Shown here one piece after another: positions 21,800-50,020 of a DNA stretch of 64,000 nt. The translations under genes and the position numbers were made by a program. The DNA lies in the IMG/VR virus record IMGVR_UViG_3300046804_003469, positions 124,001-188,000 of that record; one strand, 5' to 3'. Within the stretch, counting starts at the first letter, position 1; every line of letters begins with the position of its first letter. The notes below the pieces were generated by a model. The model was not told where the DNA came from and made no database searches. It saw only the letters and a list, made by a program, of their open reading frames with translations.

Positions 21800-22644
21800 T
21801 GGCACAACCATCTACTAGACAAGAATTAATCGACTATTGTAAAAGAAAACTGGGACATCCAGTTTTAGAGATTAACGTTGCTGATGAACAAATTGATGAT
21901 TTGGTAGATGATGCTATTCAATTCTTTCAAGAAAGACATTTTGATGGTGTGTATCAAACATACATGAAATATAAAATTACTCAAGATGATATTAATAGAG
22001 GAAGATCTAGAGCTCATGGCGTAACTCCAGTTGGAATTACAACCACTACAGTATATGAAAATCTTGGAAATTCTACTTCATTTTCTTTTGAAGAAAATGG
22101 AAACTACTTACCAGTTCCTCCATCAGTAATTGGAGTTGAAAGAATATTTCATTTTGATGGTTCAAACACCATAACACATAATATGTTTAGTGTTAAATAT
22201 CAATTATTTTTAAATGATATTTACTATTGGGGTTCAACGGAACTGTTAACTTATGCCATGGTTAAAACATATCTTGAAGATATTGACTTTTTATTGACAA
22301 CTCAGAAACAAATTAGATTTAATAAGAGACAAGATAGACTTTATCTTGATATTGATTGGGGAAGTGTTACTCCAGATACTTATCTAATTATTGATTGTTA
22401 TAGAACACTCGATCCAAATGATTACGGAAGAGTATGGAATGATTCGTTCTTAAAATTATATCTCACATCGCTAATTAAACGTCAGTGGGGTCAGAATTTA
22501 ATTAAATTCCAAGGTGTAAAACTTCCAGGTGGAGTAGAATTAAATGGAAGGCAATTATATGATGATGCTCAAAGAGAAATTGATGTACTTATGGAAAAAA
22601 TGTCCAATACTTACGAACTCCCACCATTAGACATGATTGGATAA
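21799..22644 (+). CDS. gp13: Neck protein gp13
   Basis: RQELIDYCKRKLGHPVLEINV...KRQWGQNLIKFQGVKLPGGVELNG. Confidence 0.95.
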   Translation: MAQPSTRQELIDYCKRKLGHPVLEINVADEQIDDLVDDAIQFFQERHFDGVYQTYMKYKITQDDINRGRSRAHGVTPVGITTTTVYENLGNSTSFSFEENGNYLPVPPSVIGVERIFHFDGSNTITHNMFSVKYQLFLNDIYYWGSTELLTYAMVKTYLEDIDFLLTTQKQIRFNKRQDRLYLDIDWGSVTPDTYLIIDCYRTLDPNDYGRVWNDSFLKLYLTSLIKRQWGQNLIKFQGVKLPGGVELNGRQLYDDAQREIDVLMEKMSNTYELPPLDMIG

Positions 22645-22645
22645 T

Positions 22646-24079
22646 ATGCTTAATCCATTTTTCCTCCAAGGGTCAAAATCAGAACAATCTTTAGTTCAAG
22701 ATTTAATTAATGAACAACTCCGCATGTATGGAGTTGAAATTTATTATTTGCCAAGAAAGTATGTTACTAAAAATACTGTAATTAGAGAAGTAATTGAATC
22801 TAAATTTGATAATGCATATCCATTGGAAGCATATGTTGATACGTATGATGGATATGAGGGACAGGGAACTATTCTTTCAAAATTTGGCATTCAACCATTA
22901 ACAGACTTAACTGTTATTATTTCTAAAGAAAGATTTGAAACTTATATTACACCATTAATAAAAAATTTACCGAATGTAGAACTAGCAACCAGACCAAAAG
23001 AGGGAGATTTAATTTATTTTCCTCTTGGTCACAGATTATTTGAAATTAAATTTGTTGAGCACGAAAAACCTTTTTATCAACTTCAAAAAACTTATGTCTA
23101 TGAATTGAGATGTGAACTCTTTAGACTTGAAGATGAAATTATAGATACTGGAGTTGCTGATGTAGATAATACTGTGAATGGTGGAGTTGATAATTTAGGC
23201 AATACATCAATTAATGATGAAGATAGTAATACTTATATTCAAGGGCATACCCAAACTTTACAATTAGTTGGATCTGGTGTAACTGCAACTGCAATCACTA
23301 GTGTATTAAATCATGGTGTAAGATATATTGATATTTTAAATAGAGGAAATGGATATACTTCCACACCAACTATAAAAATATCATCAGCACCTTTGGGTGG
23401 ATCTACAGCAGTTGGAATTGCCTCTATGATTGATGGTCTTATTGATTGTGATGGTATAATTTCACCAAAAATACAAGCAATTCAAATTATAAATCCTGGT
23501 TATGGTTATGATGTAACACCTTCTATAATGGCAATTGGTGGAGGTGGATCTGGATTTATTGCTACATGCGTTCTTGGAGATGGAATAGTTGGAATTATTA
23601 CAGTCACAAATGGTGGATCTGGATATGTTAATAATCCTACAGTAACTATTAGTAGTCCATCTTCTGGTGAAACTGCAACCGCAACTGCTCACATTAATAC
23701 AGTTGGAATTGTTACTATGATAACTTTATCAAATACTGGATATGGTTACACTAGCGTTCCAACTATAACAATACAATCTCCAAATGTAACTGGAATTGGA
23801 ACATACGTTCCTAATGAAACTATAGTTGGAAGTATATCTCAAACTACAGCACTGGTAAGATCCTGGAATTCACTCACTAATGAGTTAATAATTTCAAATA
23901 TTTCTGGTTCATTTAAACCTGGGGAAGTTATAACAGGTTCAGAATCTGGTGCGTTTTATAATTTGAAAAAATATGTTCTTGATAATTCGATAGATAAATA
24001 TAATCAAAATTTAGAAATACAAACTGAATCTAATTCAATTATTGACTTTTCTGAATCCAACCCTTTTGGGATGCCATAA
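22646..24079 (+). CDS. gp14: Neck/head-closure protein gp14 with C-terminal beta-repeat extension
   Basis: MLNPFF...EQSLVQDLINEQLRMYGVEIYYLPR, RPKEGDLIYFP, ending DFSESNPFG. ATG 22646 preferred over TTG 22637. Confidence 0.93.
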   Translation: MLNPFFLQGSKSEQSLVQDLINEQLRMYGVEIYYLPRKYVTKNTVIREVIESKFDNAYPLEAYVDTYDGYEGQGTILSKFGIQPLTDLTVIISKERFETYITPLIKNLPNVELATRPKEGDLIYFPLGHRLFEIKFVEHEKPFYQLQKTYVYELRCELFRLEDEIIDTGVADVDNTVNGGVDNLGNTSINDEDSNTYIQGHTQTLQLVGSGVTATAITSVLNHGVRYIDILNRGNGYTSTPTIKISSAPLGGSTAVGIASMIDGLIDCDGIISPKIQAIQIINPGYGYDVTPSIMAIGGGGSGFIATCVLGDGIVGIITVTNGGSGYVNNPTVTISSPSSGETATATAHINTVGIVTMITLSNTGYGYTSVPTITIQSPNVTGIGTYVPNETIVGSISQTTALVRSWNSLTNELIISNISGSFKPGEVITGSESGAFYNLKKYVLDNSIDKYNQNLEIQTESNSIIDFSESNPFGMP

Positions 24080-24119: not shown

Positions 24120-25121
24120 ATGTTTGAATATTTTTATCACGAAATACTAAGAAGAACCATAATTGGTTTTGGTTCTTTATTTAATGGTATTTCAATTAAA
24201 CATGTTAATGAATCAAAAGATGTAACCAATGTTATACAAGTTCCTCTTGCATACGGACCTACTCAAAAATTTCTCGCAAGATTAGAGCAAGTACCAAATT
24301 TAAATAAACCAGTTCAAATCACATTACCAAGAATGTCATTTGAATTTGTTGGTTTAACCTACGATCCTACAAGAAAAGTAACTACAACTCAAACATTTTT
24401 ATCTGTCGATAAAAATGGAAGTAGTGTAAGAAAAACTTTTATGCCAGTTCCATACAATATGGAATTTGAACTTTCTATTTTTACAATTTTAAATGATGAT
24501 ATGCTTCAAATCATCGAACAAATTTTACCTTATTTTCAACCTGCATATACATTGACAGTTGATTTAGTAGATAAAATTGGAGAAAAAAGAGATATTCCAA
24601 TCGTAATAGATTCTATTACGATGCAAGATAATTATGAAGGAAATTTTGATACTAGAAGAGCGTTAATTTATACCATTAGATTTACTGCTAAAACTTATCT
24701 TTTTGGACCTACTTCTTCTTCGGATGTATCCAAAGATATTATTCAAAGAGTTTCTATTGGTTATGTTACTGGAGAACAGGGAAGTGGTGCAACCAGAGAT
24801 CTCACATATAGTGTTGAACCAAGAGCATTACAAAGTTATTCAAATAATACAGTTACTTCCTTGGCATCAGATATTGATCAATCTTCCACTTTATTAACAG
24901 TAAATGATACTTCATCTTTAGCAATAAACAAGTATATTACTATAGATAATGAAGAACTTTATATTACTTCTATCCCAAGTTCAACTACAATTATTGTAAA
25001 TAGAGGTGCTGATGGAACCACTGCATCTTCTCACGTATCTGGAACTGAAATTAAGTTAATTACTCAATCTGATAATTCTTTAATACCATTTGGCGACGAT
25101 TTTGGATTTGATGGATTATGA
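24120..25121 (+). CDS. gp15: Tail terminator/sheath stabiliser gp15 with extra C-terminal domain
   Basis: YFYHEILRRTIIGFGSLFN, VPLAYGPTQKFLARL, LPRMSFE, QIIEQILPYFQP. Confidence 0.95.
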   Translation: MFEYFYHEILRRTIIGFGSLFNGISIKHVNESKDVTNVIQVPLAYGPTQKFLARLEQVPNLNKPVQITLPRMSFEFVGLTYDPTRKVTTTQTFLSVDKNGSSVRKTFMPVPYNMEFELSIFTILNDDMLQIIEQILPYFQPAYTLTVDLVDKIGEKRDIPIVIDSITMQDNYEGNFDTRRALIYTIRFTAKTYLFGPTSSSDVSKDIIQRVSIGYVTGEQGSGATRDLTYSVEPRALQSYSNNTVTSLASDIDQSSTLLTVNDTSSLAINKYITIDNEELYITSIPSSTTIIVNRGADGTTASSHVSGTEIKLITQSDNSLIPFGDDFGFDGL

Positions 25122-25567
25122 AAATGACTAAAAAATTTGATAACCTAAATCAAACTTTTAATGTTTCTGGAGACATTGTTTCGAAAGAAGTGGAAGAAAT
25201 ACAACCAATTGAAGATAAAATTGAAAAAATATCTTCAATTTCAGATGATATTAAAAAAGATTATGAATATACGAGAGGAAACTTATATTCTATCATTGAA
25301 AAAGGTCAGGAAGCAATTAATGGTATATTAGAACTTGCCCAAGAAAGTGAAATGCCTCGTGCATATGAGGTTGCTGGACAATTAATTAAGAGTGTTTCTG
25401 ATGCAACTGATAAGTTAATGGATCTTCAGAAAAAACTAAAAGATATTGATGAAGTTAAACATAAAGGCCCTACAAATGTTACAAATGCACTTTTTGTTGG
25501 ATCAACTGCAGAACTTCAAAAATTGTTAAAACAACAACAATTTAATGGAGAAGTTCCAAACAAATAA
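25118..25567 (+). CDS. gp16: Terminase small subunit gp16
   Basis: DYEYTRGNLY, PRAYEVAGQLIK, NALFVGSTAELQK. Confidence 0.95.
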   Translation: MKMTKKFDNLNQTFNVSGDIVSKEVEEIQPIEDKIEKISSISDDIKKDYEYTRGNLYSIIEKGQEAINGILELAQESEMPRAYEVAGQLIKSVSDATDKLMDLQKKLKDIDEVKHKGPTNVTNALFVGSTAELQKLLKQQQFNGEVPNK

Positions 25568-25570
25568 ATA
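25563..25570 (+). promoter_or_regulatory. Late promoter (AATAAATA)
   Basis: At the gp16 stop, upstream of the 582-aa ORF. Confidence 0.65.
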
Positions 25571-25596: not shown

Positions 25597-27345
25597 ATGC
25601 ATGAAGTAAAGGCGCACAAAACAATTGAGCAAATTGCAAAAAAACATCGTCTTGATGTGTCTTTTGTGAGTAAGCAGTTAGAAATGGGCATCCCTATTGA
25701 ACATGAGCATACTAAAGACAAAGATCTTGCCACTGATATTGCCCTACAGCATCTTGATGAAATTCCAGACTACTACACTAGATTAAAGAAAATGGAAGCA
25801 TCTGCCAAAAAAGAACATAAAAAGTTCAAAGATGTAAAGGAAGATGCAGATTCAGGTGTTGATGATATGGATTCGCCAATTCATCCAGTTCATGCAATTC
25901 ATGTAGATCATGAAAAAAGATACTGTCCGAAATGCAAAAGAGTTGAATTGAGAAGTCAATGTAAATATGGACCAAAATGTTGGGACATGTTTTCATCTCC
26001 AGCCAAATTAAAAGAGGAAAAATCTATGCAAGACGAAAAAAGATATTGCCCTCTATGCGATAAAAGAGAAACGAGATCTGAATGTTCTTATGGTGGCAAG
26101 GCATGGGATAAAGTATCTGTAAAAGATCATGAGTACTCTATGGCACGTTCTGAACTTTCTACTATTGCAGATGCAGTTAAAAGATTGAATATGAAGGTTG
26201 GAAAAGGTGAAGGTAACTTAGAAGCATGGGTTCAATCAAAAATTACTAAAGCAGCAGATTACATTGATACTGTGGCAGATTATATTGCAAGTGGTGAAAT
26301 GGAAGAAGCATTAAGTTTTGAACTTGGTCCAAAATTCAAAACCGCACAAAAGATAGCAAAAGCATCTGAAATTTCTAAAAAAGGATCTACTGAAGGAGAA
26401 AGAACTGCAGGTAAAAAAGCAGTTCAAAGATTGGGTGGAACTGCAGCAGAACTGCCTAAGATTAAAGAGGAAAATTTAGTTAATAAAATTTTAGGAGAGT
26501 TGGAAGAGGATAAAAAGAAGGGTTTGTGGGATAATATTCATGCTCGTAGAGAAAAAGGATTACCACGTAAAAAACCAGGACAAAAAGGATATCCAGAAAC
26601 ACTCGATATTGATGAAGACCTTGAACAAGCACGTAAAAATGTAGGTGCTAGTAAATGCTGGAAAGGTAAAGTTGCAAAGGGAACAAAAATAAAGAATGGA
26701 AAAGAAGTTCCAAACTGTGTTCCTGCAGAAAGCGTAACTATTGAAGATGCAAATGGAAATCCATATGTAGAATTTGTTGATTTAATTAAACCAGATCCAC
26801 TTGTATCTGAGACATATCGTTTACCTCCTAATAATGGAAATATACTTCTTGTAACTGTAATGTGGAGAGGAGCAACATATTCAACAAAAATGTTCTTCCC
26901 ACAAATTAATATTCCATCAAGAAAAGATGTAACTGATGAAATTCAAAAAGTATATCCAGGGGCAAAAGTTTTAGCATATCAACCATCAAATTTTCAACCT
27001 GGACAAGCACTGATTGTTACCGATAGAAGATCAAAAAATTATCTTATCACAAACAAAACAATTGGTGAAGAAGTAGAACTTGAAGAAGATTGGCAATCTG
27101 TAAATCGTAAAGATAAAACTGATGGATTAAGTCAAAAAGCAGTTAATGCTTATCGTCGTGAAAATCCTGGTTCCAAGTTACAAACTGCTGTAACTGAAAA
27201 AAAGCCTAAAGGGAAAAGGAAGAAAAGACGTAAGAGTTTTTGTAGTCGTATGAAAGGAATGAAATCAAAACTTACATCAGCAAAAACTGCTAGAGATCCA
27301 GATTCAAGAATTAACAAAGCACTTCGTCGTTGGAATTGTAACTAA
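25597..27345 (+). CDS. Modular 582-aa protein, probable internal head protein/polyprotein
   Basis: DUF5661-like N-module (GIPIEHEHT...IALQHLDEIPDYYTRL), two CPxC repeats, and a basic DUF6321-like C-module (SFCSRMKG...SRINKALRRWNC). Modules are separated by acidic xxEE linkers. Confidence 0.6.
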   Translation: MHEVKAHKTIEQIAKKHRLDVSFVSKQLEMGIPIEHEHTKDKDLATDIALQHLDEIPDYYTRLKKMEASAKKEHKKFKDVKEDADSGVDDMDSPIHPVHAIHVDHEKRYCPKCKRVELRSQCKYGPKCWDMFSSPAKLKEEKSMQDEKRYCPLCDKRETRSECSYGGKAWDKVSVKDHEYSMARSELSTIADAVKRLNMKVGKGEGNLEAWVQSKITKAADYIDTVADYIASGEMEEALSFELGPKFKTAQKIAKASEISKKGSTEGERTAGKKAVQRLGGTAAELPKIKEENLVNKILGELEEDKKKGLWDNIHARREKGLPRKKPGQKGYPETLDIDEDLEQARKNVGASKCWKGKVAKGTKIKNGKEVPNCVPAESVTIEDANGNPYVEFVDLIKPDPLVSETYRLPPNNGNILLVTVMWRGATYSTKMFFPQINIPSRKDVTDEIQKVYPGAKVLAYQPSNFQPGQALIVTDRRSKNYLITNKTIGEEVELEEDWQSVNRKDKTDGLSQKAVNAYRRENPGSKLQTAVTEKKPKGKRKKRRKSFCSRMKGMKSKLTSAKTARDPDSRINKALRRWNCN

Positions 27346-27361
27346 TATATAAATTTTTATT

Positions 27362-29011
27362 ATGGCAAATGATAACATTTACTTAGGTAATCCTAATCTA
27401 AAAAAAGCAAATACACCGATTGAATTTACTCAAGAACAGATTCTTGAGTTTGTAAAATGTAAAAATGATCCTGTATATTTTTCAAAAAATTATGTAAAAA
27501 TTGTGACTCTTGATCACGGTCTGCAACCATTTGAACCTTATGATTTTCAAGAAAAATTAATTAATAACTTCTATAAGAATAGATTTAATATTTGTAAGAT
27601 GCCACGGCAAACTGGTAAATCTACCACCGTAGTATCTTTTCTTTTACATTATGCAGTATTCAATGACAGTGTAAATATTGGTATTCTTGCAAACAAAGCA
27701 TCAACTGCAAGAGAACTTTTAAGTAGACTTCAAATTGCTTATGAAAACCTTCCTAAATGGATGCAGCAAGGCATTCTATCGTGGAATAAGGGTTCTCTTG
27801 AGTTAGAGAATGGTTCAAAGATTCTTGCCGCTTCTACGTCAGCATCTGCTGTCAGAGGAATGTCATTTAATATTATCTTTTTGGATGAATTTGCGTTCGT
27901 TCCAAATCATATTGCTGATGACTTTTTTAGTTCAGTATATCCAACTATTTCTTCAGGTAAATCCACAAAGGTAATTATTGTATCTACGCCCAAAGGTATG
28001 AATCATTTCTACCGAATGTGGCATGATGCTGAACGAGGAAAAAATGAATATATTCCTACAGATGTTCATTGGTCTGAAGTTCCTGGAAGAGATTCTGCTT
28101 GGAAAGAGCAAACCATTAAAAATACTTCAGAACAACAATTTAAAGTTGAGTTTGAATGTGAATTCTTAGGATCTGTAGATACTTTAATTGCTCCTAGCAA
28201 ATTAAGAAGTTTGATTTATGAGGCACCACAAACAAGGAATGCTGGATTAGATGTCTATGAAGACTCTAAAGATAATCATGACTATGTTATTTCTGTAGAC
28301 GTTGCTAGAGGAGTTGGGAACGACTACTCAGCATTTGTTGTGGTGGATATTACAGAGTTCCCCCATAGAATGGTTGCAAAGTATCGAGATAACAATATAA
28401 AACCGATGCTATTTCCAAGTATAATTCAAGAGGTAGCAAAAAATTACAACAATGCTTATATCTTATGTGAGGTTAATGATATTGGAGATCAAGTAGCAAG
28501 TATTCTTCACTATGATTTAGAATATACAAATATTCTTATGTGTTCTATGAGAGGTAGAGCAGGTCAAATTGTTGGACAAGGATTTTCTGGAAAGAAAACA
28601 CAACTTGGTGTCAAAATGTCCAAAACTGTTAAAAAAGTTGGATGTTTAAATCTTAAAACACTTATAGAAGAAAGTAAACTGTTACTTTGTGATTATGATA
28701 CAATTAGTGAATTAACAACATTTATCCAAAAGCATAATTCTTTTGAAGCAGAAGAAGGTTGTAATGACGATCTTGCTATGTGCTTAGTAATTTATGCTTG
28801 GTTAGTCGCTCAAGATTACTTTAAAGAACTTACCGATCAAGATGTAAGAAAGCGTTTATATGAAGAACAAAAAAATCAAATAGAGCAGGATATGGCTCCA
28901 TTTGGATTTATATCTGACGGATTAGATGATGTTAGTTTTGTGGATGATGATGGTGATAGATGGTTCACAGATGAATATGGTGACCGTTCATATATGTGGC
29001 AATATATGTGA
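27362..29011 (+). CDS. gp17: Terminase large subunit gp17
   Basis: Walker A PRQTGKST, Walker B IIFLDEFAF, nuclease motifs VDVARG and NDDLAM. Confidence 0.98.
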   Translation: MANDNIYLGNPNLKKANTPIEFTQEQILEFVKCKNDPVYFSKNYVKIVTLDHGLQPFEPYDFQEKLINNFYKNRFNICKMPRQTGKSTTVVSFLLHYAVFNDSVNIGILANKASTARELLSRLQIAYENLPKWMQQGILSWNKGSLELENGSKILAASTSASAVRGMSFNIIFLDEFAFVPNHIADDFFSSVYPTISSGKSTKVIIVSTPKGMNHFYRMWHDAERGKNEYIPTDVHWSEVPGRDSAWKEQTIKNTSEQQFKVEFECEFLGSVDTLIAPSKLRSLIYEAPQTRNAGLDVYEDSKDNHDYVISVDVARGVGNDYSAFVVVDITEFPHRMVAKYRDNNIKPMLFPSIIQEVAKNYNNAYILCEVNDIGDQVASILHYDLEYTNILMCSMRGRAGQIVGQGFSGKKTQLGVKMSKTVKKVGCLNLKTLIEESKLLLCDYDTISELTTFIQKHNSFEAEEGCNDDLAMCLVIYAWLVAQDYFKELTDQDVRKRLYEEQKNQIEQDMAPFGFISDGLDDVSFVDDDGDRWFTDEYGDRSYMWQYM

Positions 29012-29235
29012 TGGATTTAGATAATCAAATAACATTAGGTCATTTATTTTTCACAAATAGGAATTGTAGGACTTGTGGGAAACAAAAAAATTTACTAGAA
29101 GATTTTTATAGAATTAGAAAAGGATCTTTAGTATCTTCATATTCTTACGAATGTAAAGAATGCACCAAGGAAAGAATTATAAAAAATAGAAAAAATAAAT
29201 TTTATCATTACAAAACAGAATATCCCGATTGGTAG
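29011..29235 (+). CDS. Small CxxC...CxxC zinc-binding protein
   Basis: CRTC...YECKEC...EYPDW. TGATG overlap with the gp17 stop. Confidence 0.7.
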   Translation: MDLDNQITLGHLFFTNRNCRTCGKQKNLLEDFYRIRKGSLVSSYSYECKECTKERIIKNRKNKFYHYKTEYPDW

Positions 29236-34066: not shown

Positions 34067-34387
34067 ATGAAATCTTTCAAGCAATTTATCTCAGAATCAG
34101 TTAATATTGCTGGCGATTTCACAGGAAATCTTTATATCAACTCGCAACCAGATCAACCACAGCAAGTTGGTGAGGAATATGTTGCTGATGTAATGTGGAA
34201 TGGAAGTTTATATAGGTTGGAATTAACAACTAGAAACGGAATTCCAACAAAACAAGAACTTGGTGAGCAATTACAATCAACTTATCCTGGTGTAGTTGTT
34301 CATCAAATTTATCCAATGATGGAAAAGAATTTAAATATCAAAGATGTAAAAAGATACCACCCATCAAAATTAGAATGGATTGATTGA
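34067..34387 (+). CDS. Putative internal head protein with capsid-targeting-like N-terminus
   Basis: Starts MKSFKQFISE (T4 internal-protein CTS is MKTYQEFIAE). Shares a domain with the 582-aa ORF. Confidence 0.65.
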   Translation: MKSFKQFISESVNIAGDFTGNLYINSQPDQPQQVGEEYVADVMWNGSLYRLELTTRNGIPTKQELGEQLQSTYPGVVVHQIYPMMEKNLNIKDVKRYHPSKLEWID

Positions 34388-35856: not shown

Positions 35857-36408
35857 ATGACTCATAGACCAGTTGGAGCTGGTGTTTCAATCGCCACTTC
35901 CATAACTTCAGCACAATCAAGTGCATTTACATGCCAATCAAATGCAATTCGTTTAGTTGCATCTGGTGCTGGTGCATTTGTTGCGATTGGCACAAATCCA
36001 ACTGCAACTACTTCAGATTATTATATTCCAGCAAATACTGCAGCAGTTCTCACTCTTGATATTGGTTCACAAAGAGTAGTTGGTGTTACTACTGGAACAA
36101 CCACAATTATAGATTTTCCAGAAGGAACTGGTTCACCATTTGATGTTGGAGAAACAGTAACTTTGACTGCATCAAGTCAAACATATTATAACTTCACTCA
36201 TGCAACTGTTGCTTCAGTAAATAATTCTTCTGGGGTTGGTGGTTATTATTCCACAAGAATTGTAGTAAATGCCAATACTAGTGGGATTGTAACAGCATTT
36301 ACTGATGCAGATACGACTTTAAGAAAATCATTAAAAGTTGCAGCTAGAACCGATACTGGAACTGGTACACTTTATGCACAACAAATTCAAGTTACAGGAC
36401 AGGCATAA
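35857..36408 (+). CDS. 183-aa Thr/Gly-rich hypothetical structural protein
   Basis: Late promoter upstream; sits immediately before gp21. Confidence 0.75.
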   Translation: MTHRPVGAGVSIATSITSAQSSAFTCQSNAIRLVASGAGAFVAIGTNPTATTSDYYIPANTAAVLTLDIGSQRVVGVTTGTTTIIDFPEGTGSPFDVGETVTLTASSQTYYNFTHATVASVNNSSGVGGYYSTRIVVNANTSGIVTAFTDADTTLRKSLKVAARTDTGTGTLYAQQIQVTGQA

Positions 36409-36409
36409 A

Positions 36410-37057
36410 ATGAAACTTATCAGAGAAGAAATAGAAAAAGTAAAAGTTATTACCGAAGAAAAAAACGGTAAGAAAAATCTTTATATTCAAGGTGTGTTCC
36501 TCCAAAGTGAGTGTGTAAACCGCAATGGAAGGATGTATCCTTTTTCAATTATGGAAAGGGAAGTAAAAAGATATAATGAAAACTATGTTCAAAAAGGTAG
36601 AGCATTAGGTGAACTTGGACATCCTGATGGTCCAACCGTCAATCTCGATAGAGTATCTCATAAAATTGTAGAACTCTATCAAAAAGGAAATAACTTTATT
36701 GGTAAAGCACAAATTTTATCCACTCCAATGGGTAAAATTGCAGAAGCACTTTTAGGTGATGGTGTTACTTTGGGTGTTTCTTCTCGTGGTATTGGTTCTT
36801 TAAAAGAGAATCATAAAGGGTATAAAGAAGTTGGTGAAGATTTTATGCTTGCAACTGCAGCAGATATTGTTGCAGATCCTTCTGCTCCTGATGCTTTTGT
36901 TCAGGGAATCATGGAAGGAGTTGAGTGGGTTTGGAATAATGGAATTCTTGAGCAAAGAGTTCAAGGATTTAAAACAAAGATAGATAGATTAGCAAGATCA
37001 AGACAACTTGAAGAGAATAAATTAAACCTCTTCAATGAATTTCTTGCAAATTTATAA
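36410..37057 (+). CDS. gp21: Prohead protease gp21
   Basis: MKLIREE start, NRNGRMY, ALGELGHP, GVSSRGIGS, DIVADPSAPDAFV. Confidence 0.97.
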   Translation: MKLIREEIEKVKVITEEKNGKKNLYIQGVFLQSECVNRNGRMYPFSIMEREVKRYNENYVQKGRALGELGHPDGPTVNLDRVSHKIVELYQKGNNFIGKAQILSTPMGKIAEALLGDGVTLGVSSRGIGSLKENHKGYKEVGEDFMLATAADIVADPSAPDAFVQGIMEGVEWVWNNGILEQRVQGFKTKIDRLARSRQLEENKLNLFNEFLANL

Positions 37058-37059
37058 TT

Positions 37060-37067
37060 TATAAATA
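37060..37067 (+). promoter_or_regulatory. Late promoter (TATAAATA, perfect T4 consensus)
   Basis: Upstream of gp22/gp23. Confidence 0.85.
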
Positions 37068-37105
37068 AATATAGATTAAATTACTAGGTTAATCGGAGAG
37101 TTCAA

Positions 37106-38335
37106 ATGTCTCGTGGAGATTTACAAGAAATGGAAGTAGGCACTAAGCAATCCAAAACCGCTGTCAATGCAAATGCTAAGGCAGGGGATGCAATGCCAAA
37201 ATTATCAGGAAATCTTCCTGATGGACAAACAGGAAGTTGGGAAGATCTTGGTGGACCAGATCCTTCCAACTATCGTCCAGATGATGATTCAGCAAAACTG
37301 AAGACACCTGGAGCAACTCTGAAGCAAGTCAGAGATGTTGTTAACAAGGGTGCTAAGGGTGCTGATCCAATGAAAGGTCTTAAGAAAGAAGACGCTGATT
37401 ATGATGAGGACGAAGAACTCTTAGAAGGTAAGTACGAAGAAGAGGAAGAGGAGGAAGAAGAGGAAGAGGAAGAAGAAGGTGGTAAGAAAAAAGGTAAGAA
37501 AAAAGTAGCAGAAGCTAAAGAGGAAGAGGAGGAAGAGGAGGAAGAAGAGGAAGAGGAGGAAGAAGAGGAAGAGGATGGTGAGAAGAAAGGTAAAAAGAAA
37601 ATGGAAGAAGACTTCAACATCGATGAAGATGTTGATGCTCTCGTAGGTGGTGAAGATCTTTCCGAAGAATTTAAGGAAAGAGCAAAAGTTATTTTTGAGG
37701 CTGCATTAAGAAGCAAGGTTTCTGAAATTCAAGAAGCACTTGAAGTGCAGTATGAAGAAAGACTCATCGAAGAAGTTTCTGAAATCAAAGCAGAACTTCA
37801 AGAAAGAGTCGATGCATACCTTGAGTATGTTTCTGAAGAATGGATGTCAGAAAATGAACTGGCAGTTGAGCACGGACTCAAATCCGAAATGACCGAATCA
37901 TTCCTTTCAGGAATGAAGGATCTTTTTGAAGCACATTATGTATCAATCCCTGAAGATAAATATGATGTTCTTGAGAGCATGGTAGAAAAACTTGATGACA
38001 TGGAGACAAAACTCAACGAGCAAATCGAGAAAAATATCCATTTAAACAAGCGTCTCGCAGAGTCGGTTGCTGATGGAATCTTTGAACAAGTTTCTGAAGG
38101 TCTTGCGGCTACTCAGAAAGATAAGCTCGCTTCACTTGCCGAAAGTGTTGAGTTTGAAAGTGAAGAAGAATATCGTGAAAAACTGGAGACATTAAGGGAA
38201 TCGTATTTCCCTTCAAGAGGAGCTTCTCCATCAACTAAAGCTGATACCCTTTCAGAGGGCGTAAGCATTGCTCCTGAGTCATACACAGGTTCAATGGCTG
38301 CTTATTTGAAAACTCTTTCAGCATTTAGTAAATAA
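37106..38335 (+). CDS. gp22: Prohead scaffold/core protein gp22
   Basis: LSEEFKERAKVIFEAA, VDAYLEYVSEEWMSEN, KLETLRESYF. Lies between gp21 and gp23. Confidence 0.95.
   Translation: MSRGDLQEMEVGTKQSKTAVNANAKAGDAMPKLSGNLPDGQTGSWEDLGGPDPSNYRPDDDSAKLKTPGATLKQVRDVVNKGAKGADPMKGLKKEDADYDEDEELLEGKYEEEEEEEEEEEEEEGGKKKGKKKVAEAKEEEEEEEEEEEEEEEEEEDGEKKGKKKMEEDFNIDEDVDALVGGEDLSEEFKERAKVIFEAALRSKVSEIQEALEVQYEERLIEEVSEIKAELQERVDAYLEYVSEEWMSENELAVEHGLKSEMTESFLSGMKDLFEAHYVSIPEDKYDVLESMVEKLDDMETKLNEQIEKNIHLNKRLAESVADGIFEQVSEGLAATQKDKLASLAESVEFESEEEYREKLETLRESYFPSRGASPSTKADTLSEGVSIAPESYTGSMAAYLKTLSAFSK
37436..37600 (+). repeat. Two (GAR)n tracts encoding E14 and E18, each followed by a GKKK-type basic cap
   Basis: Direct reading of the GAA/GAG runs. 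Confidence 0.95.
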
Positions 38336-38394
38336 TTGAATTTAATATAATTCAAACCCAAAAAACAAACACTTAGTAAAAAAGGTAAAAGCAA

Positions 38395-39831
38395 ATGTTC
38401 CATTCCGAGCATCTGCAGGAAAAGTGGGCACCACTCTTAGACTATCAGGGTCTTGATCCAATCAAAGATTCTCATCGTAGAGCTGTAACCGCTGTCCTGC
38501 TCGAAAACCAAGAGAAATTCTTAAGAGAGCAATCTGCTTTCGATAACGGTTCCATGAGTATGCTCATGGAGTCCCCAACCAATAGTGCAAACGCTGCTGG
38601 CGCAACAGGTGGATTTGGCGGCGGCGCTGCTGCTGGCGGTCCTACTGCTGGTTTTGATCCAGTTCTGATTTCACTCATTCGTCGTTCAATGCCTAACTTG
38701 GTCGCTTATGACCTCGCTGGCGTTCAACCAATGAGTGGTCCTACTGGACTCATCTTCGCAATGCGTTCACGTTATACCAATCAAAACGGTACTGAGACAT
38801 TCTTCAACGAAGTAGATACTGCATTCTCAGGTCAGAATGCTGGTGGTACTCTTGTTGGATTTGCTGACACTAGTGCTGGTATTGGTACAACTGCACAGTC
38901 TGGTTCTAACCCATCAATTCTGAACCCAACTGCTAGTGCATCACAAACCGATTATAACGTCGGTGAAGGTATGCTCACTGGCGATTCAGAAAATCTTGAT
39001 GGTAACAGCACTGGTGCTTTCAACCAGATGGCATTCTCAATCGAGAAAGTCACTGTTACTGCACGTTCAAGAGCACTGAAAGCCGAGTATTCATTAGAAC
39101 TCGCACAAGACCTCAAGGCAATCCATGGTCTGAACGCTGAGGCTGAGTTAGCAAACATTCTCTCAACCGAGATTCTTGCTGAAATCAACCGTGAAGTTAT
39201 CAGAACCATCTACAAGATTGCTGAACAGGGTGCTGTAGAAAATACCGCAACTGCTGGTGTATTCGACCTCGACGTTGATTCAAACGGTCGTTGGTCAGTT
39301 GAGAAGTTCAAGGGTCTTCTGTTCCAGATCGAAAGAGACGCAAACAGAATCGCTCAGAGAACTCGTAGAGGAAAGGGTAACATCATCATGTGCTCTGCTG
39401 ACGTTGCTTCAGCACTGACCATGGCTGGTGTTCTCGATTACACCCCTGCGCTCAATGCTAACCTCAATGTTGATGACACTGGTAACACCTTCGCTGGTGT
39501 TCTCCAAGGTCGTTACAGAGTTTATATCGACCCATATGCTGCAAACCTTGCTGCTGATAACAGCGGTCTCGCACAGGGCACCAACCAATACTACGTTGTT
39601 GGTTATAAGGGTTCCAGCCCATATGATGCTGGTCTCTTCTATTGCCCATATGTTCCTCTCCAAATGGTACGTGCCGTTGGTGAGAACTCCTTCCAGCCCA
39701 AGATTGGCTTCAAGACCCGTTACGGTATTGTTGCTAACCCATTTGCTGAAGGTACAACCCAAGGTCTCGGCAGACTCAAAGTTAACGCAAACCGTTACTA
39801 CAGAAGAGTTGCTATCAAGAACCTCATGTGA
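38395..39831 (+). CDS. gp23: Major capsid protein gp23
   Basis: EKWAPLL, GVQPMSGPTGLIFAMRSRY, RALKAEYSLELAQDLKAIHGLNAEAEL, FQPKIGFKTRYG. Confidence 0.99.
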   Translation: MFHSEHLQEKWAPLLDYQGLDPIKDSHRRAVTAVLLENQEKFLREQSAFDNGSMSMLMESPTNSANAAGATGGFGGGAAAGGPTAGFDPVLISLIRRSMPNLVAYDLAGVQPMSGPTGLIFAMRSRYTNQNGTETFFNEVDTAFSGQNAGGTLVGFADTSAGIGTTAQSGSNPSILNPTASASQTDYNVGEGMLTGDSENLDGNSTGAFNQMAFSIEKVTVTARSRALKAEYSLELAQDLKAIHGLNAEAELANILSTEILAEINREVIRTIYKIAEQGAVENTATAGVFDLDVDSNGRWSVEKFKGLLFQIERDANRIAQRTRRGKGNIIMCSADVASALTMAGVLDYTPALNANLNVDDTGNTFAGVLQGRYRVYIDPYAANLAADNSGLAQGTNQYYVVGYKGSSPYDAGLFYCPYVPLQMVRAVGENSFQPKIGFKTRYGIVANPFAEGTTQGLGRLKVNANRYYRRVAIKNLM

Positions 39832-39852
39832 TTCATCACACAAAGGTCTCTG

Positions 39853-39878
39853 GGGTGCCGAAAGGCACCCTTTTTTTT
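39853..39878 (+). terminator. Intrinsic terminator after gp23
   Basis: GGGTGCC-GAAA-GGCACCC followed by T8. Confidence 0.92.
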
Positions 39879-39879
39879 A

Positions 39880-39887
39880 TCTAAATA
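39880..39887 (+). promoter_or_regulatory. Late promoter variant (TCTAAATA)
   Basis: Directly after the terminator, before gp3. Confidence 0.6.
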
Positions 39888-39896
39888 TTTAAAAAA

Positions 39897-40460
39897 ATGG
39901 CAACGAGTAACGCATTTAAAAATCAGATACAAAATAGAAACTTTCTTTCCCCAGTTGGATTTAAGTTTTTATTGAATAGAGCACCTAAAGTTGCATTCTT
40001 TAGCAATTCAGCAAATGTTCCTGGAATGACTCTTGGAACAGCAATTCAACCAACATATTTAAAAGATATTGATGTTCCTGGTGATAAAATTACATTTCAA
40101 GATTTTTCTTTAAGATTTTTAGTTGATGAAAATCTTGAGAATTATTTGGAAATACAACATTGGATGAGAGGTCTTGGATATCCAGAATCTTTAGAAGAAA
40201 TTTATAATTTACAATCAGAAAATAAAATTGGAACTACCAGTTCAAAATTAATGGATATATTTTCTGACGGAACTTTGCAAATTTTAACAAGTAGTAATAA
40301 TTTAAATTTTCAAGTAAAATTCAAAGATTTATTTCCAGTAGATTTGTCAAATCTCGAATTTGATGCTACGGATACTGATATTGAATACTTTACAGCACAA
40401 GTCACTTTCAAGTATACTATTTACAATATAACTGATTTAAATGGAAATGTTTTAGCATGA
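39897..40460 (+). CDS. gp3: Tail tube terminator/completion protein gp3
   Basis: NRNFLSPVGFKF, LRFLVDENLENY, AQVTFKY. Follows gp23. Confidence 0.88.
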   Translation: MATSNAFKNQIQNRNFLSPVGFKFLLNRAPKVAFFSNSANVPGMTLGTAIQPTYLKDIDVPGDKITFQDFSLRFLVDENLENYLEIQHWMRGLGYPESLEEIYNLQSENKIGTTSSKLMDIFSDGTLQILTSSNNLNFQVKFKDLFPVDLSNLEFDATDTDIEYFTAQVTFKYTIYNITDLNGNVLA

Positions 40461-44689: not shown

Positions 44690-46388
44690 AAAAATTCGTT
44701 GGAAAAACTTTTTAAGCACTGGAAATCAGTTTACGGAAGTCATTCTCAACAAGACAGATAACACTCTTATTATAGGATCAAATGGTGCTGGAAAGAGTAC
44801 AATTCTTGATGCATTGACTTTTTCACTTTTTGGAAAACCTTTTCGTAAAATTAATAAACCACAACTTATAAATTCTACGAATGAAAAGGATTGTTTAGTT
44901 GAGGTTGAATTATCTATTGGTTCTACTTCTTGGAAAGTTGTGCGTGGAATTAAACCAGCAATATTTGAAATTTATAGAAATGGTAAACTTTTAGATCAAT
45001 CTGCTGCTGCTTTAGACCAACAAAAATGGTTAGAGCAAACTGTATTAAAAATGAATTACAAATCTTTCACTCAGATTGTAATTCTTGGATCAAGTACATT
45101 TGTCCCCTTTATGCAACTTCCTGCTGCTCATAGGAGAGAAGTTATTGAAGATCTTTTGGATATTAAAATATTTTCTTCAATGACTTCAATTATTAAGGAT
45201 AAAATACGTCAAATTAAAGATGATATCAAAGTTTTGAATCTTAAAAAAGATTCTTTAAAAGATAAAGTTGATATGCAACAAAATTTTATTGAAGAATTGG
45301 AAAATCGTGGAAATGCCAAAATAAATGCCAATAAAGAAAAGATTGCAAATTTAGATCAAGAAGTTGGTGTTTATATGGTGGATAACTCTGCTATTGAAGA
45401 AGGAATTTATAAACTTCAAAAAGAACAAGAGGGAGTTATTAGTTCTGTAGAAAAAATAAAAAAACTTAATAATCTTAAAGGTAAAGTATCTCAAAAAGTA
45501 GTATCAGTAACAAGAGAGCATAAGTTTTTTAAAGAAAATACGGTATGCCCTACTTGTACTCAAACAATTGAAGAAGAATTTCGGTTAAATAAAGTTGCAG
45601 ATGCTCAAAATAAAGCAAAAGAACTCCAAAAAGGTTATCAAGAACTTGAGGAGACTATAAAAAATGAACAGGAAAGAGAGCGTCAATTTATTGAACTTTC
45701 CAAAGAAATTACAAAACTAAACCATGAGATTTCGCAGAATAATACTCGCATTTCCTTCAACCAAAGACAAATTCAAGATCTTGAATCTGAAATTCAAACT
45801 ATTACCGAACAGATTAAGAATAAAAATACTGAACATGAAAAATTAGAAGAATTTAAAAAAAATCTAACGGAAACTTTTTCTGAACTAGCAGAGAAAAAAG
45901 ACAAAATTAATTATTATGATTTTTCATATAGTTTACTTAAAGATGGTGGAGTAAAAACTAAAATCATCAAGAAGTATCTACCGCTGATAAATCAGCAAGT
46001 TAATCGTTATCTTCAAATGATGGATTTTTATATCAATTTTACTCTTGATGAAGAGTTTGATGAAACTATTCAATCTCCCATTCATGAAGATTTTTCTTAT
46101 GCTTCTTTTAGTGAGGGTGAAAAAATGAGAATTGATTTGTCTCTTTTGTTTACTTGGAGAGAAGTTGCCAGATATAAAAATTCAGTAAATACGAATCTTT
46201 TAATCCTTGATGAAGTATTTGATTCTTCTTTAGATGGATTTGGTACTGATGAATTTTTAAAAATTATTCGGTATGTTATAAAAGATGCTAATATCTTTGT
46301 TATTTCGCATAAAACGGGAATGGAAGATAAATTTAGAAGTGTAGTAAAATTTGAAAAAATTAAAGGTTTTAGTAGGATGGTTTCTTAA
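44676..46388 (+). CDS. gp46: Recombination ATPase gp46 (Rad50/SbcC-like)
   Basis: GSNGAGKS, CPTC zinc hook, FSEGEK signature, LILDEVFD. Confidence 0.97.
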   Translation: MILFEKIRWKNFLSTGNQFTEVILNKTDNTLIIGSNGAGKSTILDALTFSLFGKPFRKINKPQLINSTNEKDCLVEVELSIGSTSWKVVRGIKPAIFEIYRNGKLLDQSAAALDQQKWLEQTVLKMNYKSFTQIVILGSSTFVPFMQLPAAHRREVIEDLLDIKIFSSMTSIIKDKIRQIKDDIKVLNLKKDSLKDKVDMQQNFIEELENRGNAKINANKEKIANLDQEVGVYMVDNSAIEEGIYKLQKEQEGVISSVEKIKKLNNLKGKVSQKVVSVTREHKFFKENTVCPTCTQTIEEEFRLNKVADAQNKAKELQKGYQELEETIKNEQERERQFIELSKEITKLNHEISQNNTRISFNQRQIQDLESEIQTITEQIKNKNTEHEKLEEFKKNLTETFSELAEKKDKINYYDFSYSLLKDGGVKTKIIKKYLPLINQQVNRYLQMMDFYINFTLDEEFDETIQSPIHEDFSYASFSEGEKMRIDLSLLFTWREVARYKNSVNTNLLILDEVFDSSLDGFGTDEFLKIIRYVIKDANIFVISHKTGMEDKFRSVVKFEKIKGFSRMVS

Positions 46389-46432
46389 GTGGCACATGAA
46401 GAAGATTGGGCAGATCGTTTGGTAAATAGGAT
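46386..46432 (+). promoter_or_regulatory. Phage-type promoter: AAGTGGCACA box plus -10 TAGGAT
   Basis: 31-nt spacing from TGGCAC to the -10, identical to the copies at 46582 and 48812. Confidence 0.55.
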
Positions 46433-46464
46433 ATGGGACTTCATAGATAGGATCTGTTACCCTG

Positions 46465-48797: not shown

Positions 48798-48798
48798 T

Positions 48799-48854
48799 CC
48801 ACTTTTCAAACTGTCACAAGAGTCATCTCTATGCCCCTTGTGTGCCCCTATAAT
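48799..48854 (+). promoter_or_regulatory. Phage-type promoter: CCACTT-N3-AAACTGTCACAAGA plus -10 TATAAT
   Basis: Perfect -10 located 31 nt after TGTCAC; no canonical -35. Confidence 0.75.
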
Positions 48855-48886
48855 TACTTTGTTGAAACAATTCCACTTAACTCATC

Positions 48887-49999: not shown

Positions 50000-50020
50000 T
50001 TTCTAATAAAACTTTTTTAC

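What the first reader, a model, noticed from the sequence alone, without database searches (positions are those of the whole stretch)
25597..27345. Bead-on-string protein between gp16 and gp17: probable gp21-processed internal polyprotein
Seen: at least seven short, mostly basic modules. They include two zinc-ribbon-like repeats (EKRYCPKCKRVELRSQCKYGPKCWD and EKRYCPLCDKRETRSECSYGGKAWD), a 'WVQSKITKAADYI' helix, 'GLWDNIHARR', 'CWKG...VPNCVP' and a basic C-module. They are separated by VKED, LKEE, MEEA, IKEE, LEED, VSE and LEED linkers, and a late promoter lies upstream. Known: T4 gp21 cleaves after hydrophobic-X-Glu. Inference: one precursor is packaged into the prohead and cut into several small effectors injected with the DNA.
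Basis: partly seen in the sequence, partly recalled or inferred. Interest (0 to 1): 0.65.

Follow-up and report, generated by a model that had tools for sequence, protein, structure and literature searches.

The report
Modular internal head polyprotein of cyanophage
This 582-residue gene of a T4-like cyanophage strings together about ten small protein modules joined by sites that fit the phage's head-maturation protease, and the same modules occur elsewhere as separate small proteins carrying the T4 signal for packaging into the head, so it is most likely a precursor that is loaded into the capsid and cut into pieces.

Summary
The ORF (25597-27345, +, 582 aa) is real. It lies between TerS (gp16) and TerL (gp17) of a T4-like cyanomyovirus, and a NATAAATA late-promoter-like motif sits 34 nt upstream. 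It belongs to cyanophage cluster T4-GC119, which ends in DUF6321. Homologs were found by mass spectrometry in S-SM1 and S-SCSM1 virions, with function unknown. The family is extremely mosaic.

- In 57 of the 120 best short relatives, DUF6321 follows a 9-10-residue leader (M-K-T/S-F/L-K-x-F/Y-I/L-x-E). This matches the T4 capsid-targeting sequence MKTYQEFIAE. The leader's final Glu lies where P0001 has LEE|DWQ.
- A 106-aa gene beside the portal gene (34067-34387) starts MKSFKQFISE|S. Its mature part is homologous to P0001 417-471.
- A hydrophobic-x-Glu site directly precedes module starts far more often than shuffling predicts: DUF6321 95% against 37%, GLW 100%, beta-domain 90%.

The genome encodes a gp21-type protease (Peptidase_S77).

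Not shown: cleavage itself, head location of this protein (it has no N-terminal targeting sequence), ejection, or any effector role.

Verdict: probable protease-processed internal head polyprotein, confidence about 0.6. It is a new variant of a known kind.

The parts
25563..25570 (+). AATAAATA, a T4-type late-promoter-like motif 34 nt upstream of the ATG. It overlaps the gp16 stop codon.
   Evidence: The NATAAATA motif lies 19-46 nt upstream of 12 + strand ORFs, including gp15, gp18, gp20 and gp22. This rests on the motif only; no transcript data were used.
25597..27345 (+). ORF for the 582-aa multi-module protein P0001 (66 kDa, pI 9.3). It is a member of cyanophage cluster T4-GC119 and the DUF5661...DUF6321 family.
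25597..25842 (+). Module 1, residues 1-82: DUF5661, a four-helix domain that ends in the conserved KKFKDV-K-E82.
   Evidence: Pfam PF18905, E 9e-16. pLDDT is 76-90. V-x-E follows KKFKD across the family. The domain is also fused to CTP_transf_like, HD and DUF5824 in other viral proteins.
25843..26016 (+). Residues 83-140: an acidic disordered spacer (83-103), then Cys-rich repeat 1 (CPKC-x9-C-x5-C). It ends at LKE140.
   Evidence: One search gives the sequence. pLDDT is below 50 for residues 80-103 and 87 for residues 110-130, with beta-hairpin strands predicted at 108-117.
26017..26307 (+). Residues 141-237: Cys-rich repeat 2 (3 Cys only) fused to the long helical hairpin EYSMARSEL...EAWVQSKITKAADYI. 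It ends at MEE237.
   Evidence: Many columns are invariant in 49 homologs. The helix start is rarely preceded by hxE (31%), so ZnR2 and the helix behave as one unit.
26308..26508 (+). Residues 238-304: a basic helical segment (net +6) ending at IKE291, then the short LVNKILGELEE304 helix.
26509..26616 (+). Residues 305-340: the GLWDNIHARR module. It ends at IDE340.
   Evidence: hxE lies 0-5 aa upstream in 25/25 unique contexts. Stand-alone genes start M-x-KKKGLW. A separate 58-aa gene in podovirus P-SCSP1i carries the same module.
26617..26730 (+). Residues 341-378: the DLEQARKNVGASK-CWKG...VPNCVP module (beta-hairpin, 2 Cys). It ends at PAE378.
   Evidence: The module occurs between a capsid-targeting leader and DUF6321 in P0030, P0079, P0095 and P0098.
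26731..26811 (+). Residues 379-405: the acidic SVTIEDANGN... segment. It ends at VSE405.
   Evidence: It aligns with the first residues after the targeting leader of ORF106 (SE|SVNIAGDF...). pLDDT is below 50.
26812..27087 (+). Residues 406-497: a beta-beta-alpha-beta domain (WRG..Y..KMFFPQ...VYPG) plus a linker ending at LEE497.
   Evidence: It is homologous to the ORF106 family: BLASTP E 9e-7 and hhalign probability 94.5%, E 7.5e-8. pLDDT is 80-89. hxE lies immediately upstream in 26/29 contexts.
27088..27342 (+). Residues 498-582: DUF6321, a very basic helical C-terminal module (net +20) that starts at DWQ.
   Evidence: PF19846, E 2e-14. There are 6843 short stand-alone relatives. Of the best 120, 57 consist of a 9-10-aa T4-like leader plus this module. 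hxE lies upstream in 140/148 contexts.
34067..34387 (+). Companion gene ORF106, downstream of the portal gene gp20. It has a T4-like capsid-targeting leader MKSFKQFISE|S followed by a paralogue of P0001 residues 379-471.
   Evidence: phrog_1742. In other cyanophages its homolog lies 3-5 nt downstream of the P0001 homolog.
36338..37057 (+). gp21 homolog, the T4-type prohead serine protease and presumed processing enzyme.
   Evidence: Peptidase_S77, E 1.9e-39. phrog_207 head maturation protease, E 3e-85.
38395..39831 (+). gp23 major capsid protein. The site LME59|S lies within 3 residues of the position aligned to the T4 maturation site LTE65|A.

Best explanation
P0001 is a late-expressed precursor of internal head proteins. 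It concatenates about ten small modules, most of which exist elsewhere as separate genes. It is probably incorporated into the prohead core. When the gp21-type protease (Peptidase_S77) is activated, it would cut the disordered linkers after hydrophobic-x-Glu: E82, E140, E237, E291, E304, E340, E405 and E497, and possibly E378. That would release pieces of 1.5-11 kDa. The larger and basic pieces, above all the +20 DUF6321 module, would stay with the packaged DNA and would be expected to leave the head with it at infection.

Shown here:
- the ORF and its modular anatomy;
- the mosaicism of the family;
- homology of the modules to small proteins led by a capsid-targeting sequence, and to free-standing small proteins;
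- the position-specific hxE before module starts;
- the presence of the protease gene.

Taken from the literature: homologs are present in virions, and T4 gp21 cleaves internal proteins behind the capsid-targeting sequence.

Inferred: entry of this particular protein into the prohead, the cleavages themselves, and the fate and function of the products.
For: 1. Family identity and virion presence. The DUF6321 end matches P-SSM2 PSSM2_123, which is annotated T4-GC 119. T4-GC119 is listed as a 'Structural protein' with 13 peptide counts in the first proteome column of Table S8 of PMC3037559, which I take to be S-SM1. Its gene size ranges from 276 to 2985 nt across cyanophages. The S-SCSM1 homolog ORF29 is annotated 'virion protein' from MS of CsCl-purified particles.

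2. Equivalence with the capsid-targeting sequence. T4 IPII and IPIII begin MKTYQEFIAE|A. Of the 120 best short DUF6321 proteins, 57 consist of a 9-10-residue leader plus DUF6321 starting at DWQ. The leader logo is M1, K/I2, T/N/S3, F/L4, K5, x6, F/Y7, I/L8, x9, E10, with E10 in 29 of 29 unique leaders. In T4, residues 4 and 7 carry targeting and residues 8 and 10 carry processing (PMC9026906). P0001 has ...LEE497|DWQ at the same place. Intermediate forms exist that read leader + CWxGY module + hxE + DUF6321.

3. ORF106 in the same window starts MKSFKQFISE|S. Its mature part aligns with P0001 residues 377-463, and the leader's Glu aligns to E378. Its homologs sit directly downstream of P0001 homologs in many phages. 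In contig L093 a leader-DUF6321 gene occupies the slot upstream of phrog_1645 that ORF106 occupies here.

4. hxE ends 0-5 aa before module starts far above shuffled expectation:
- DUF6321: 140/148 unique contexts (95% against 37% shuffled; hxD only 4%).
- GLW: 25/25.
- Beta-domain: 26/29.
- SGD: 8/8.
- CWxGY: 80/115.
Before the beta-domain, P3 is I/V/L, P2 varies, P1 is always E and P1' is mostly A/S/T.

5. All 7 long low-confidence linkers of the AlphaFold model hold an hxE site (P = 0.007).

6. Modules are separate genes in a protease-less T7-like podovirus. P-SCSP1i has an 84-aa DUF6321 gene and a 58-aa GLYANIH gene side by side between the capsid and adaptor genes.

7. The gp21 homolog is present. 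gp23 has an LME|S site near the aligned T4 site. A late-promoter-like motif lies upstream.
Against: - There is no direct evidence of cleavage or of head location for this protein or any homolog.
- The published proteomes list only presence. I found no peptide lists.
- P0001 lacks an N-terminal capsid-targeting sequence. It begins with DUF5661, whose role is unknown.
- In P0001 alone the hxE count equals chance. Acidic residues are in any case enriched in its linkers, and other E/hydrophobic spacings are mildly enriched there too.
- My mosaic-breakpoint test was noisy. The reversed motif E-x-h was enriched about as much as hxE.
- Some junctions lack a hydrophobic P3, for example PAE378|S and many K-x-E-D sites before VTIED.
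- The gene sits among neck and terminase genes, not in the head-core cluster.
Confidence: 0.6

Rival explanations
1. The protein is packaged in the virion but stays essentially uncut, or loses only an end piece. It would act as one flexible, multi-domain, DNA-associated internal protein. The acidic hxE linkers would be ordinary spacers between basic domains.
For: The hxE count in P0001 is at chance, and linkers are generally rich in E and D. The E-x-h control was also enriched at mosaic breakpoints. No published proteome reports fragments.
Against: hxE keeps a fixed register immediately before module starts in 90-100% of contexts, while hxD is near 0-4%. The same position is the cleavage Glu of a T4-like targeting leader in short relatives. 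T4 gp21 cuts accessible sites of core proteins at many places (PMC5694885), so disordered hxE|A/S linkers inside a prohead would be hard to protect.
Confidence: 0.2
2. The protein is a virion or assembly component outside the head interior, or a DNA-binding helper of packaging. It might sit at the neck, the tail or the capsid surface, or act with the terminase, as its position between neck genes and gp16/gp17 could suggest.
For: The gene lies between TerS and TerL, after gp13, gp14 and gp15. In several relatives it follows tail-fibre genes. DUF6321 is extremely basic.
Against: The g15-g17 interval is a known hyperplastic hot spot, so position says little (PMC3037559). The family's place varies: it lies before gp16 in P-SSM2. 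The modules are homologous to leader-bearing small proteins and to a gene in the head-core slot. Proteins bound to DNA cannot pass the portal during packaging (established knowledge), so detection in virions argues for incorporation at assembly.
Confidence: 0.12
3. It is an evolutionary by-product: a fusion of mobile mini-genes in a recombination hot spot with no collective function. The hxE junctions would be left over from former leader sequences.
For: The mosaicism is extreme and the length range wide: 276-2985 nt and 329-773 aa. The family is linked to homing endonucleases and mobile cassettes (PMC3037559). An EndoVII-like ORF lies nearby.
Against: The frame is open in at least 2000 clustered relatives. 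DUF5661 and the helical module are nearly invariant. The cluster is present in 15 of 16 cyanomyovirus genomes and was detected in virions.
Confidence: 0.05

Closest known systems
T4 internal proteins IPI, IPII and IPIII (and Alt) with the capsid-targeting sequence
   Same: They are small, mostly basic proteins carried inside the head, and they vary greatly between related phages. A 10-residue leader ending in h-x-E is removed by gp21. Short relatives of the P0001 modules, and ORF106 in this window, carry a near-identical leader: MKSFKQFISE against MKTYQEFIAE.
   Different: P0001 has no N-terminal leader. It joins about ten modules in one chain, with the leader's h-x-E repeated as an internal joint. 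T4 internal proteins are single products cut once. There is no sequence similarity between the mature parts.
T4 prohead core proteins gp22, gp67 and gp68, which gp21 cuts at many sites
   Same: The same protease cuts them at several h-x-E sites inside the prohead (PMC5694885). Some of the resulting peptides stay in the head (established T4 knowledge).
   Different: Those proteins are scaffold that is destroyed. Here the pieces are conserved folded or basic modules that also exist as genes of their own. I found no similarity to T4 gp68.
Inner-body and ejection proteins of phiKZ-like jumbo phages (phiKZ, SPN3US)
   Same: Many internal head proteins are processed by a gp21-related protease at x-x-E motifs, often at several sites, and long propeptides are thought to target them to the prohead (PMC5694885).
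   Different: In jumbo phages one large mature fragment is kept and the propeptide is discarded. A chain of many small reusable modules has not been described there. There is no sequence relationship.
Cyanophage gene cluster T4-GC119, 'structural protein' (Sullivan et al. 2010); Pfam DUF6321 and DUF5661
   Same: P0001 is a member. It has the C-terminal DUF6321, lies in the same hyperplastic region and shows the same large size variation. The cluster was detected in virions.
   Different: The literature treats it as a hypothetical structural protein. In the library searched I found no mention of its modular make-up, the targeting-leader link or protease sites.
Polyvalent proteins of phages and conjugative elements (Iyer, Burroughs, Anand, de Souza, Aravind 2017; recalled from memory, not checked here)
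   Same: One packaged polypeptide combines many unrelated, shuffled domains. It is proposed to be delivered with the DNA and sometimes to be processed by proteases.
   Different: Those are very large proteins built from enzymatic domains. Here the modules are 13-97 residues long and show no recognisable catalytic domain.

Membership tests
T4-GC119 / DUF6321 virion protein family of cyanomyoviruses | C-terminal DUF6321 module ending ...RRWNC | tested here: met
   PF19846, E 1.9e-14, residues 505-579. tblastn finds the module in 506 phage records, among them P-SSM2 PSSM2_123, which is annotated T4-GC 119.
T4-GC119 / DUF6321 virion protein family of cyanomyoviruses | Location in the variable g15-g17 region of a T4-like cyanophage | tested here: met
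   It lies between gp16 and gp17. Homologs lie just upstream of TerL in S-SRM01, S-SCSM1, RN05-S, P-TIM68 and Bellamy.
T4-GC119 / DUF6321 virion protein family of cyanomyoviruses | Presence in purified virions | not testable with these tools
   Only homologs have data: 13 peptide counts in the first proteome column of Table S8 (taken as S-SM1) and S-SCSM1 ORF29.
T4-type internal head proteins bearing a capsid-targeting sequence | N-terminal leader of about 10 residues, M-K-x-[FY]-x-x-[FY]-[IL]-x-E | tested here: not met
   P0001 starts MHEVKAHKTIEQIAKK and continues into DUF5661. The feature is met by ORF106 (34067-34387), by a 201-aa ORF just outside the window, and by 57 of 120 short DUF6321 relatives.
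T4-type internal head proteins bearing a capsid-targeting sequence | The genome encodes a gp21-type prohead protease | tested here: met
   Window 36338-37057: Peptidase_S77, E 1.9e-39.
T4-type internal head proteins bearing a capsid-targeting sequence | Accessible hydrophobic-x-Glu cleavage site(s) | tested here: met
   Eight hxE sites lie in the 7 long low-pLDDT linkers. Their register before module starts is conserved across the family. This is sequence-level evidence only.
T4-type internal head proteins bearing a capsid-targeting sequence | Incorporation into the prohead core and cleavage by gp21 | not testable with these tools
   This needs virion MS with a semi-specific search, or gp21 co-expression.
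Viral polyprotein (one precursor, several independent mature products) | The segments exist elsewhere as separate gene products with matching boundaries | tested here: met
   DUF6321 stands alone with or without a leader. GLW and CWxG modules stand alone and start at KKKGLW. The beta-domain stands alone as ORF106. This was not examined for the DUF5661, ZnR and helix modules, apart from the Atlas listing stand-alone DUF5661 proteins.
Zinc ribbon / zinc knuckle | Four metal ligands (CxxC ... CxnC) on two beta-hairpins | tested here: inconclusive
   Repeat 1 has four Cys (CPKC-x9-C-x5-C) and predicted hairpin strands. Repeat 2 has three Cys, with Ala in place of the fourth. There is no Pfam zinc-ribbon hit for P0001.

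The most novel reading that the evidence does not exclude
Marine T4-like cyanophages keep a combinatorial kit of internal head mini-proteins. A library of 13-100-residue modules would be freely shuffled between three formats: single genes with a T4-type targeting leader, multi-module polyproteins in which the leader's h-x-E is reused as a universal joint for the prohead protease, and free genes in protease-less podoviruses. DUF5661 would be a second packaging handle that can also carry enzymes into the head, since it is fused to a cytidylyltransferase-type domain and to HD domains in other viral proteins. Each phage would then load and deliver its own cocktail of DNA-bound or host-directed peptides.
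Probability: 0.3. Interest if true: 0.78.

Novelty: new variant of a known kind. Interest (0 to 1): 0.62.

Why it matters
Internal head proteins are how T4-type phages carry ready-made proteins into the cell, and until now they have been studied mainly in coliphages. T4-like cyanophages are among the most abundant viruses in the sea, yet I found no internal proteins or capsid-targeting sequences described for them in the library searched.

If the reading is right:
- One of the most widespread cyanophage 'hypothetical structural proteins' gets a mechanism. T4-GC119 is present in 15 of 16 reference genomes, and thousands of DUF5661 and DUF6321 proteins occur in metagenomes.
- The T4 targeting-and-cleavage system is conserved from coliphages to cyanophages.
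- Module shuffling at protease joints offers a simple way to diversify what a phage delivers into its host.
- It could also offer a natural route for packaging foreign proteins into cyanophage heads.

The claim can be tested directly on existing isolates and probably on existing raw MS files.

Tried and rejected
- Foldseek search of the whole AlphaFold model against the PDB found nothing at E <= 0.001.
- The ORF106 beta-domain model against 48,161 PDB chains gave a best Z of 5.2 (a ribosomal protein). phi29 p6 scored 5.0, T7 Gp2 4.7 and T4 Dmd 4.0. All are below the level the tool calls meaningful, so I claim no fold-based function.
- T4 gp68 against P0001 showed no similarity, so DUF6321 is not shown to be a gp68 analogue.
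- The raw count of hxE in P0001 is not above chance.
- The mosaic-breakpoint test with ungapped BLAST was noisy (about 25 breakpoints per protein), and the reversed motif was enriched as well. I replaced it with the test anchored on module starts.
- The gapped BLAST breakpoint histogram was too sparse to use.
- Literature searches for DUF6321, DUF5661, and 'capsid targeting sequence' with cyanophage found nothing relevant.
- I looked for peptide-level MS data in the supplements of PMC3037559 and PMC9602691 and found none.
- The P-SCSP1u cryo-EM paper does not mention the two small genes between the capsid and adaptor genes.
- I read 'EHEHT' in DUF5661 as a possible zincin HExxH motif and rejected it, because the spacing does not fit.
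Full report
**Setting.** The window comes from a 215-kb IMG/VR virus record with about 30% G+C. It has the gene order of a T4-like cyanomyovirus: gp13, gp14, gp15 (24120-25121), gp16/TerS (25118-25567), the ORF in question (25597-27345), gp17/TerL (27362-29011), a small EndoVII-like ORF, gp18, gp19, gp20, and then the head genes gp21, gp22 and gp23. The nearest isolates are Prochlorococcus and Synechococcus myoviruses at about 75-78% DNA identity in TerL.

**The observation.** Pfam recognises only the two ends: DUF5661 at residues 11-67 and DUF6321 at residues 505-579. PHROGs show that the C-terminal module ends many families of very different length (99 to 928 aa), and that residues 283-382 match still other families.

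An AlphaFold model built on 49 homologs gives a chain of small confident elements separated by low-confidence linkers at 80-103, 138-144, 236-244, 282-293, 332-352, 378-409 and 477-509. Each of these seven linkers holds at least one [LIVMF]-x-E site (P = 0.007 on shuffling within linkers). The total number of sites in the protein is no more than composition predicts.

Three details need correcting.
- The second Cys-rich repeat has three cysteines, not four.
- Only about half of the modules are basic.
- The upstream 'late promoter' is AATAAATA at 25563-25570. This is credible because NATAAATA sits 19-46 nt before 12 + strand ORFs, including gp15, gp18, gp20 and gp22.

**What family it is.** tblastn finds relatives in 387 phage records, and the C-terminal module alone in 506. 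Nearly all are cyanophages, plus Pelagibacter phages. The P-SSM2 member is annotated T4-GC 119. In Sullivan et al. 2010, T4-GC119 is a 'Structural protein' detected with 13 peptide counts in the first proteome column, which I take to be S-SM1. It is present in 15 of 16 cyanomyovirus genomes, with gene sizes from 276 to 2985 nt (PMC3037559 Table S8). The S-SCSM1 homolog is annotated 'virion protein' from MS of CsCl-purified particles. The interval between gp16 and gp17 is a known hot spot of variable genes.

In metagenomes there are at least 2000 clusters of DUF5661-led proteins of 329-773 aa, most ending in DUF6321. There are also 6843 short proteins (47-149 aa) carrying DUF6321. All are unnamed.

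**Mosaicism.** Among 80 IMG/VR loci the homologs share modules in different numbers and orders. The GLW and CWxG modules, for example, may lie before or after the helical module. Other members carry modules that P0001 lacks, such as SGD..DWF..GWV, ACYxKVKSRY-VWPSAYASG and a stretch I recognise by eye as a DUF192-like domain (not scanned here).

**Link to the T4 packaging signal.** T4 IPII and IPIII begin MKTYQEFIAE|A. In T4 the first ten residues suffice for packaging: residues 4 and 7 matter for targeting, and residues 8 and 10 for cleavage (PMC9026906).
- In this window a 106-aa ORF downstream of the portal gene (34067-34387) begins MKSFKQFISE|S. It is the only strict match in the genome. 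A looser match (MKKFSDFINE|A, 201 aa) lies 1.6 kb beyond the window.
- The mature part of ORF106 is homologous to P0001 residues 377-471 (BLASTP E 9e-7; hhalign 94.5%, E 7.5e-8). The leader's Glu aligns to E378 of P0001.
- In S-SCSM1, S-RIM2, S-T4, RN05-S and many IMG/VR contigs, the ORF106 homolog carries the same leader and starts 3-5 nt after the stop of the P0001 homolog.
- Of the 120 best short DUF6321 proteins, 57 are 94-95 aa long and consist of a 9-10-residue leader followed by DUF6321 starting at DWQ. The 29 unique 10-residue leaders read M, K/I, T/N/S, F/L, K, x, F/Y, I/L, x, E, and E10 is invariant.
- Others read leader + CWxGY module + h-x-E + DUF6321.
- One such gene lies between the virion cytidylyltransferase gene and phrog_1645 of a T4-like contig. 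That is the slot ORF106 holds here.

P0001 has ...VELEE497|DWQ at the same point. The internal joints of the long proteins and the cleavage site of the leader are therefore the same sequence feature in the same register.

**Family-wide test.** I anchored on the first conserved residues of each module and took only unique 10-residue upstream contexts from 356 sequences. An h-x-E ends 0-5 residues before the module as follows:
- DUF6321: 140/148 contexts (95%, against 37% after shuffling those same 10-mers).
- GLW: 25/25.
- Beta-domain: 26/29.
- SGD: 8/8.
- CWxGY: 80/115.
- Cys-rich repeat: 57/107.

h-x-D is rare for most modules (0-5%; 20% before CWxGY). For DUF6321 and the beta-domain the site abuts the module in most contexts. 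Before the beta-domain, P3 is I, V or L, P2 varies, P1 is Glu and P1' is mostly Ala, Ser or Thr. That is the pattern of T4 gp21 sites, including LTE65|A of T4 gp23. ZnR2 and the helix are rarely separated, so they behave as one unit. The VTIED and ACY modules show the site less often.

**Independent genes without a protease.** In the T7-like podovirus P-SCSP1i, which has no maturation protease gene among its annotated features, DUF6321 (84 aa) and the GLYANIHAKR module (58 aa) are two adjacent genes between the capsid and adaptor genes. A Pelagibacter podophage has a 94-aa DUF6321 gene. Stand-alone GLW/CWxG proteins begin M-x-KKKGLW, which is where P0001 has LEE304|DKKKGLW.

**Mechanism proposed.** The gene is transcribed late. 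The precursor enters the prohead core, and the gp21 homolog (Peptidase_S77, E 1.9e-39) cuts the exposed joints, as gp21 does with T4 core proteins at multiple sites (PMC5694885). Products of 1.5-11 kDa result. The basic ones stay with the DNA. How P0001 itself is targeted is open. Candidates are the ORF106-like segment and DUF5661. In other viral proteins DUF5661 is fused to a CTP-transferase-like domain, an HD domain and DUF5824, and a cytidylyltransferase is itself a detected cyanophage virion protein. That DUF5661 acts as a packaging handle is my inference only.

**Limits.** Nothing here shows cleavage, head location or ejection. The word 'effector' is not supported. The only structural lead is a weak resemblance of the beta-domain to small beta-beta-alpha-beta proteins such as T7 Gp2 and phi29 p6 (Z about 5), which is not significant. 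BFVD matches merely recover the same family.

**Comparison and novelty.** The closest known systems are the T4 internal proteins with their capsid-targeting sequence, the multiply cut T4 core proteins, and the processed inner-body proteins of phiKZ-like phages. P0001 fails the defining N-terminal leader test, so I do not file it as a leader-bearing internal protein. It works like one in the sense argued above. It is a member of T4-GC119. What appears new is a chain of many reusable mini-modules joined by the leader's own cleavage motif, together with T4-like targeting leaders in cyanophages; I found neither described in the library searched.

Noticed in passing
window 34067-34387 (+): A 106-aa ORF between the portal gene gp20 and a phrog_1645 virion protein begins MKSFKQFISE|S, nearly the T4 IPII/IPIII capsid-targeting sequence. 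It has no Pfam family (phrog_1742, function unknown). It is probably a true internal head protein of this cyanophage.
   Followed up: yes
L095 1588-2193 (genome 189588-190193, about 1.6 kb beyond the window end) and L095 251-1342: A second ORF (201 aa) has a targeting-like leader, MKKFSDFINE|A. Its middle part matches modules found in virion 'cytidyltransferase' PHROGs and in phrog_22379, which also matches P0001 residues 291-376. The 363-aa ORF upstream has an acidic N-terminus and an Ala/Lys-rich basic C-terminus.
   Followed up: partly
window 28996-29235 (+): A 79-aa EndoVII-like ORF (phrog_4723, E 4e-32) overlaps the last codons of gp17. Such small endonuclease genes accompany the variable region in relatives and in the mobile cassette that Sullivan et al. 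2010 described around T4-GC119.
   Followed up: partly
window 22637-24079 (+), gp14 homolog: The 480-aa neck protein homolog is much longer than many cyanophage gp14 proteins. It carries four copies of a motif of the type N-x-G-x-GY-x-x-x-P-T-[IV]-x-I-S-S in its C-terminal half.
   Followed up: no
window 24120-25121 (+), gp15 homolog: Residues 235-316 form a C-terminal extension beyond the gp15 domain. They match tail-fibre and virion structural PHROGs (E 1e-5 to 1e-8).
   Followed up: no
window 36000-40000 and 46000-50000: G+C rises to 37-44% over gp22/gp23 and to 39% at 46-50 kb, against about 30% elsewhere.
   Followed up: no
window, + strand, 21 sites (for example 24075, 25563, 29275, 32169, 35825, 37060): NATAAATA lies 19-46 nt upstream of 12 + strand ORFs, as expected of T4-type late promoters. 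The exact TATAAATA occurs only 3 times, fewer than in shuffled sequence.
   Followed up: partly
L086 5959-6377 (Prochlorococcus podovirus P-SCSP1i): Two tiny genes between the major capsid and adaptor genes of this T7-like phage encode free DUF6321 and GLYANIHAKR modules. The cryo-EM paper on the sister phage P-SCSP1u does not mention them.
   Followed up: partly
L092 1292-3148 (Synechococcus phage Bellamy gp123): This family member carries a larger insert that looks like a DUF192-type domain among the small modules. The chain can therefore also hold domains of about 110 residues. I recognised the domain by eye and did not scan it.
   Followed up: no
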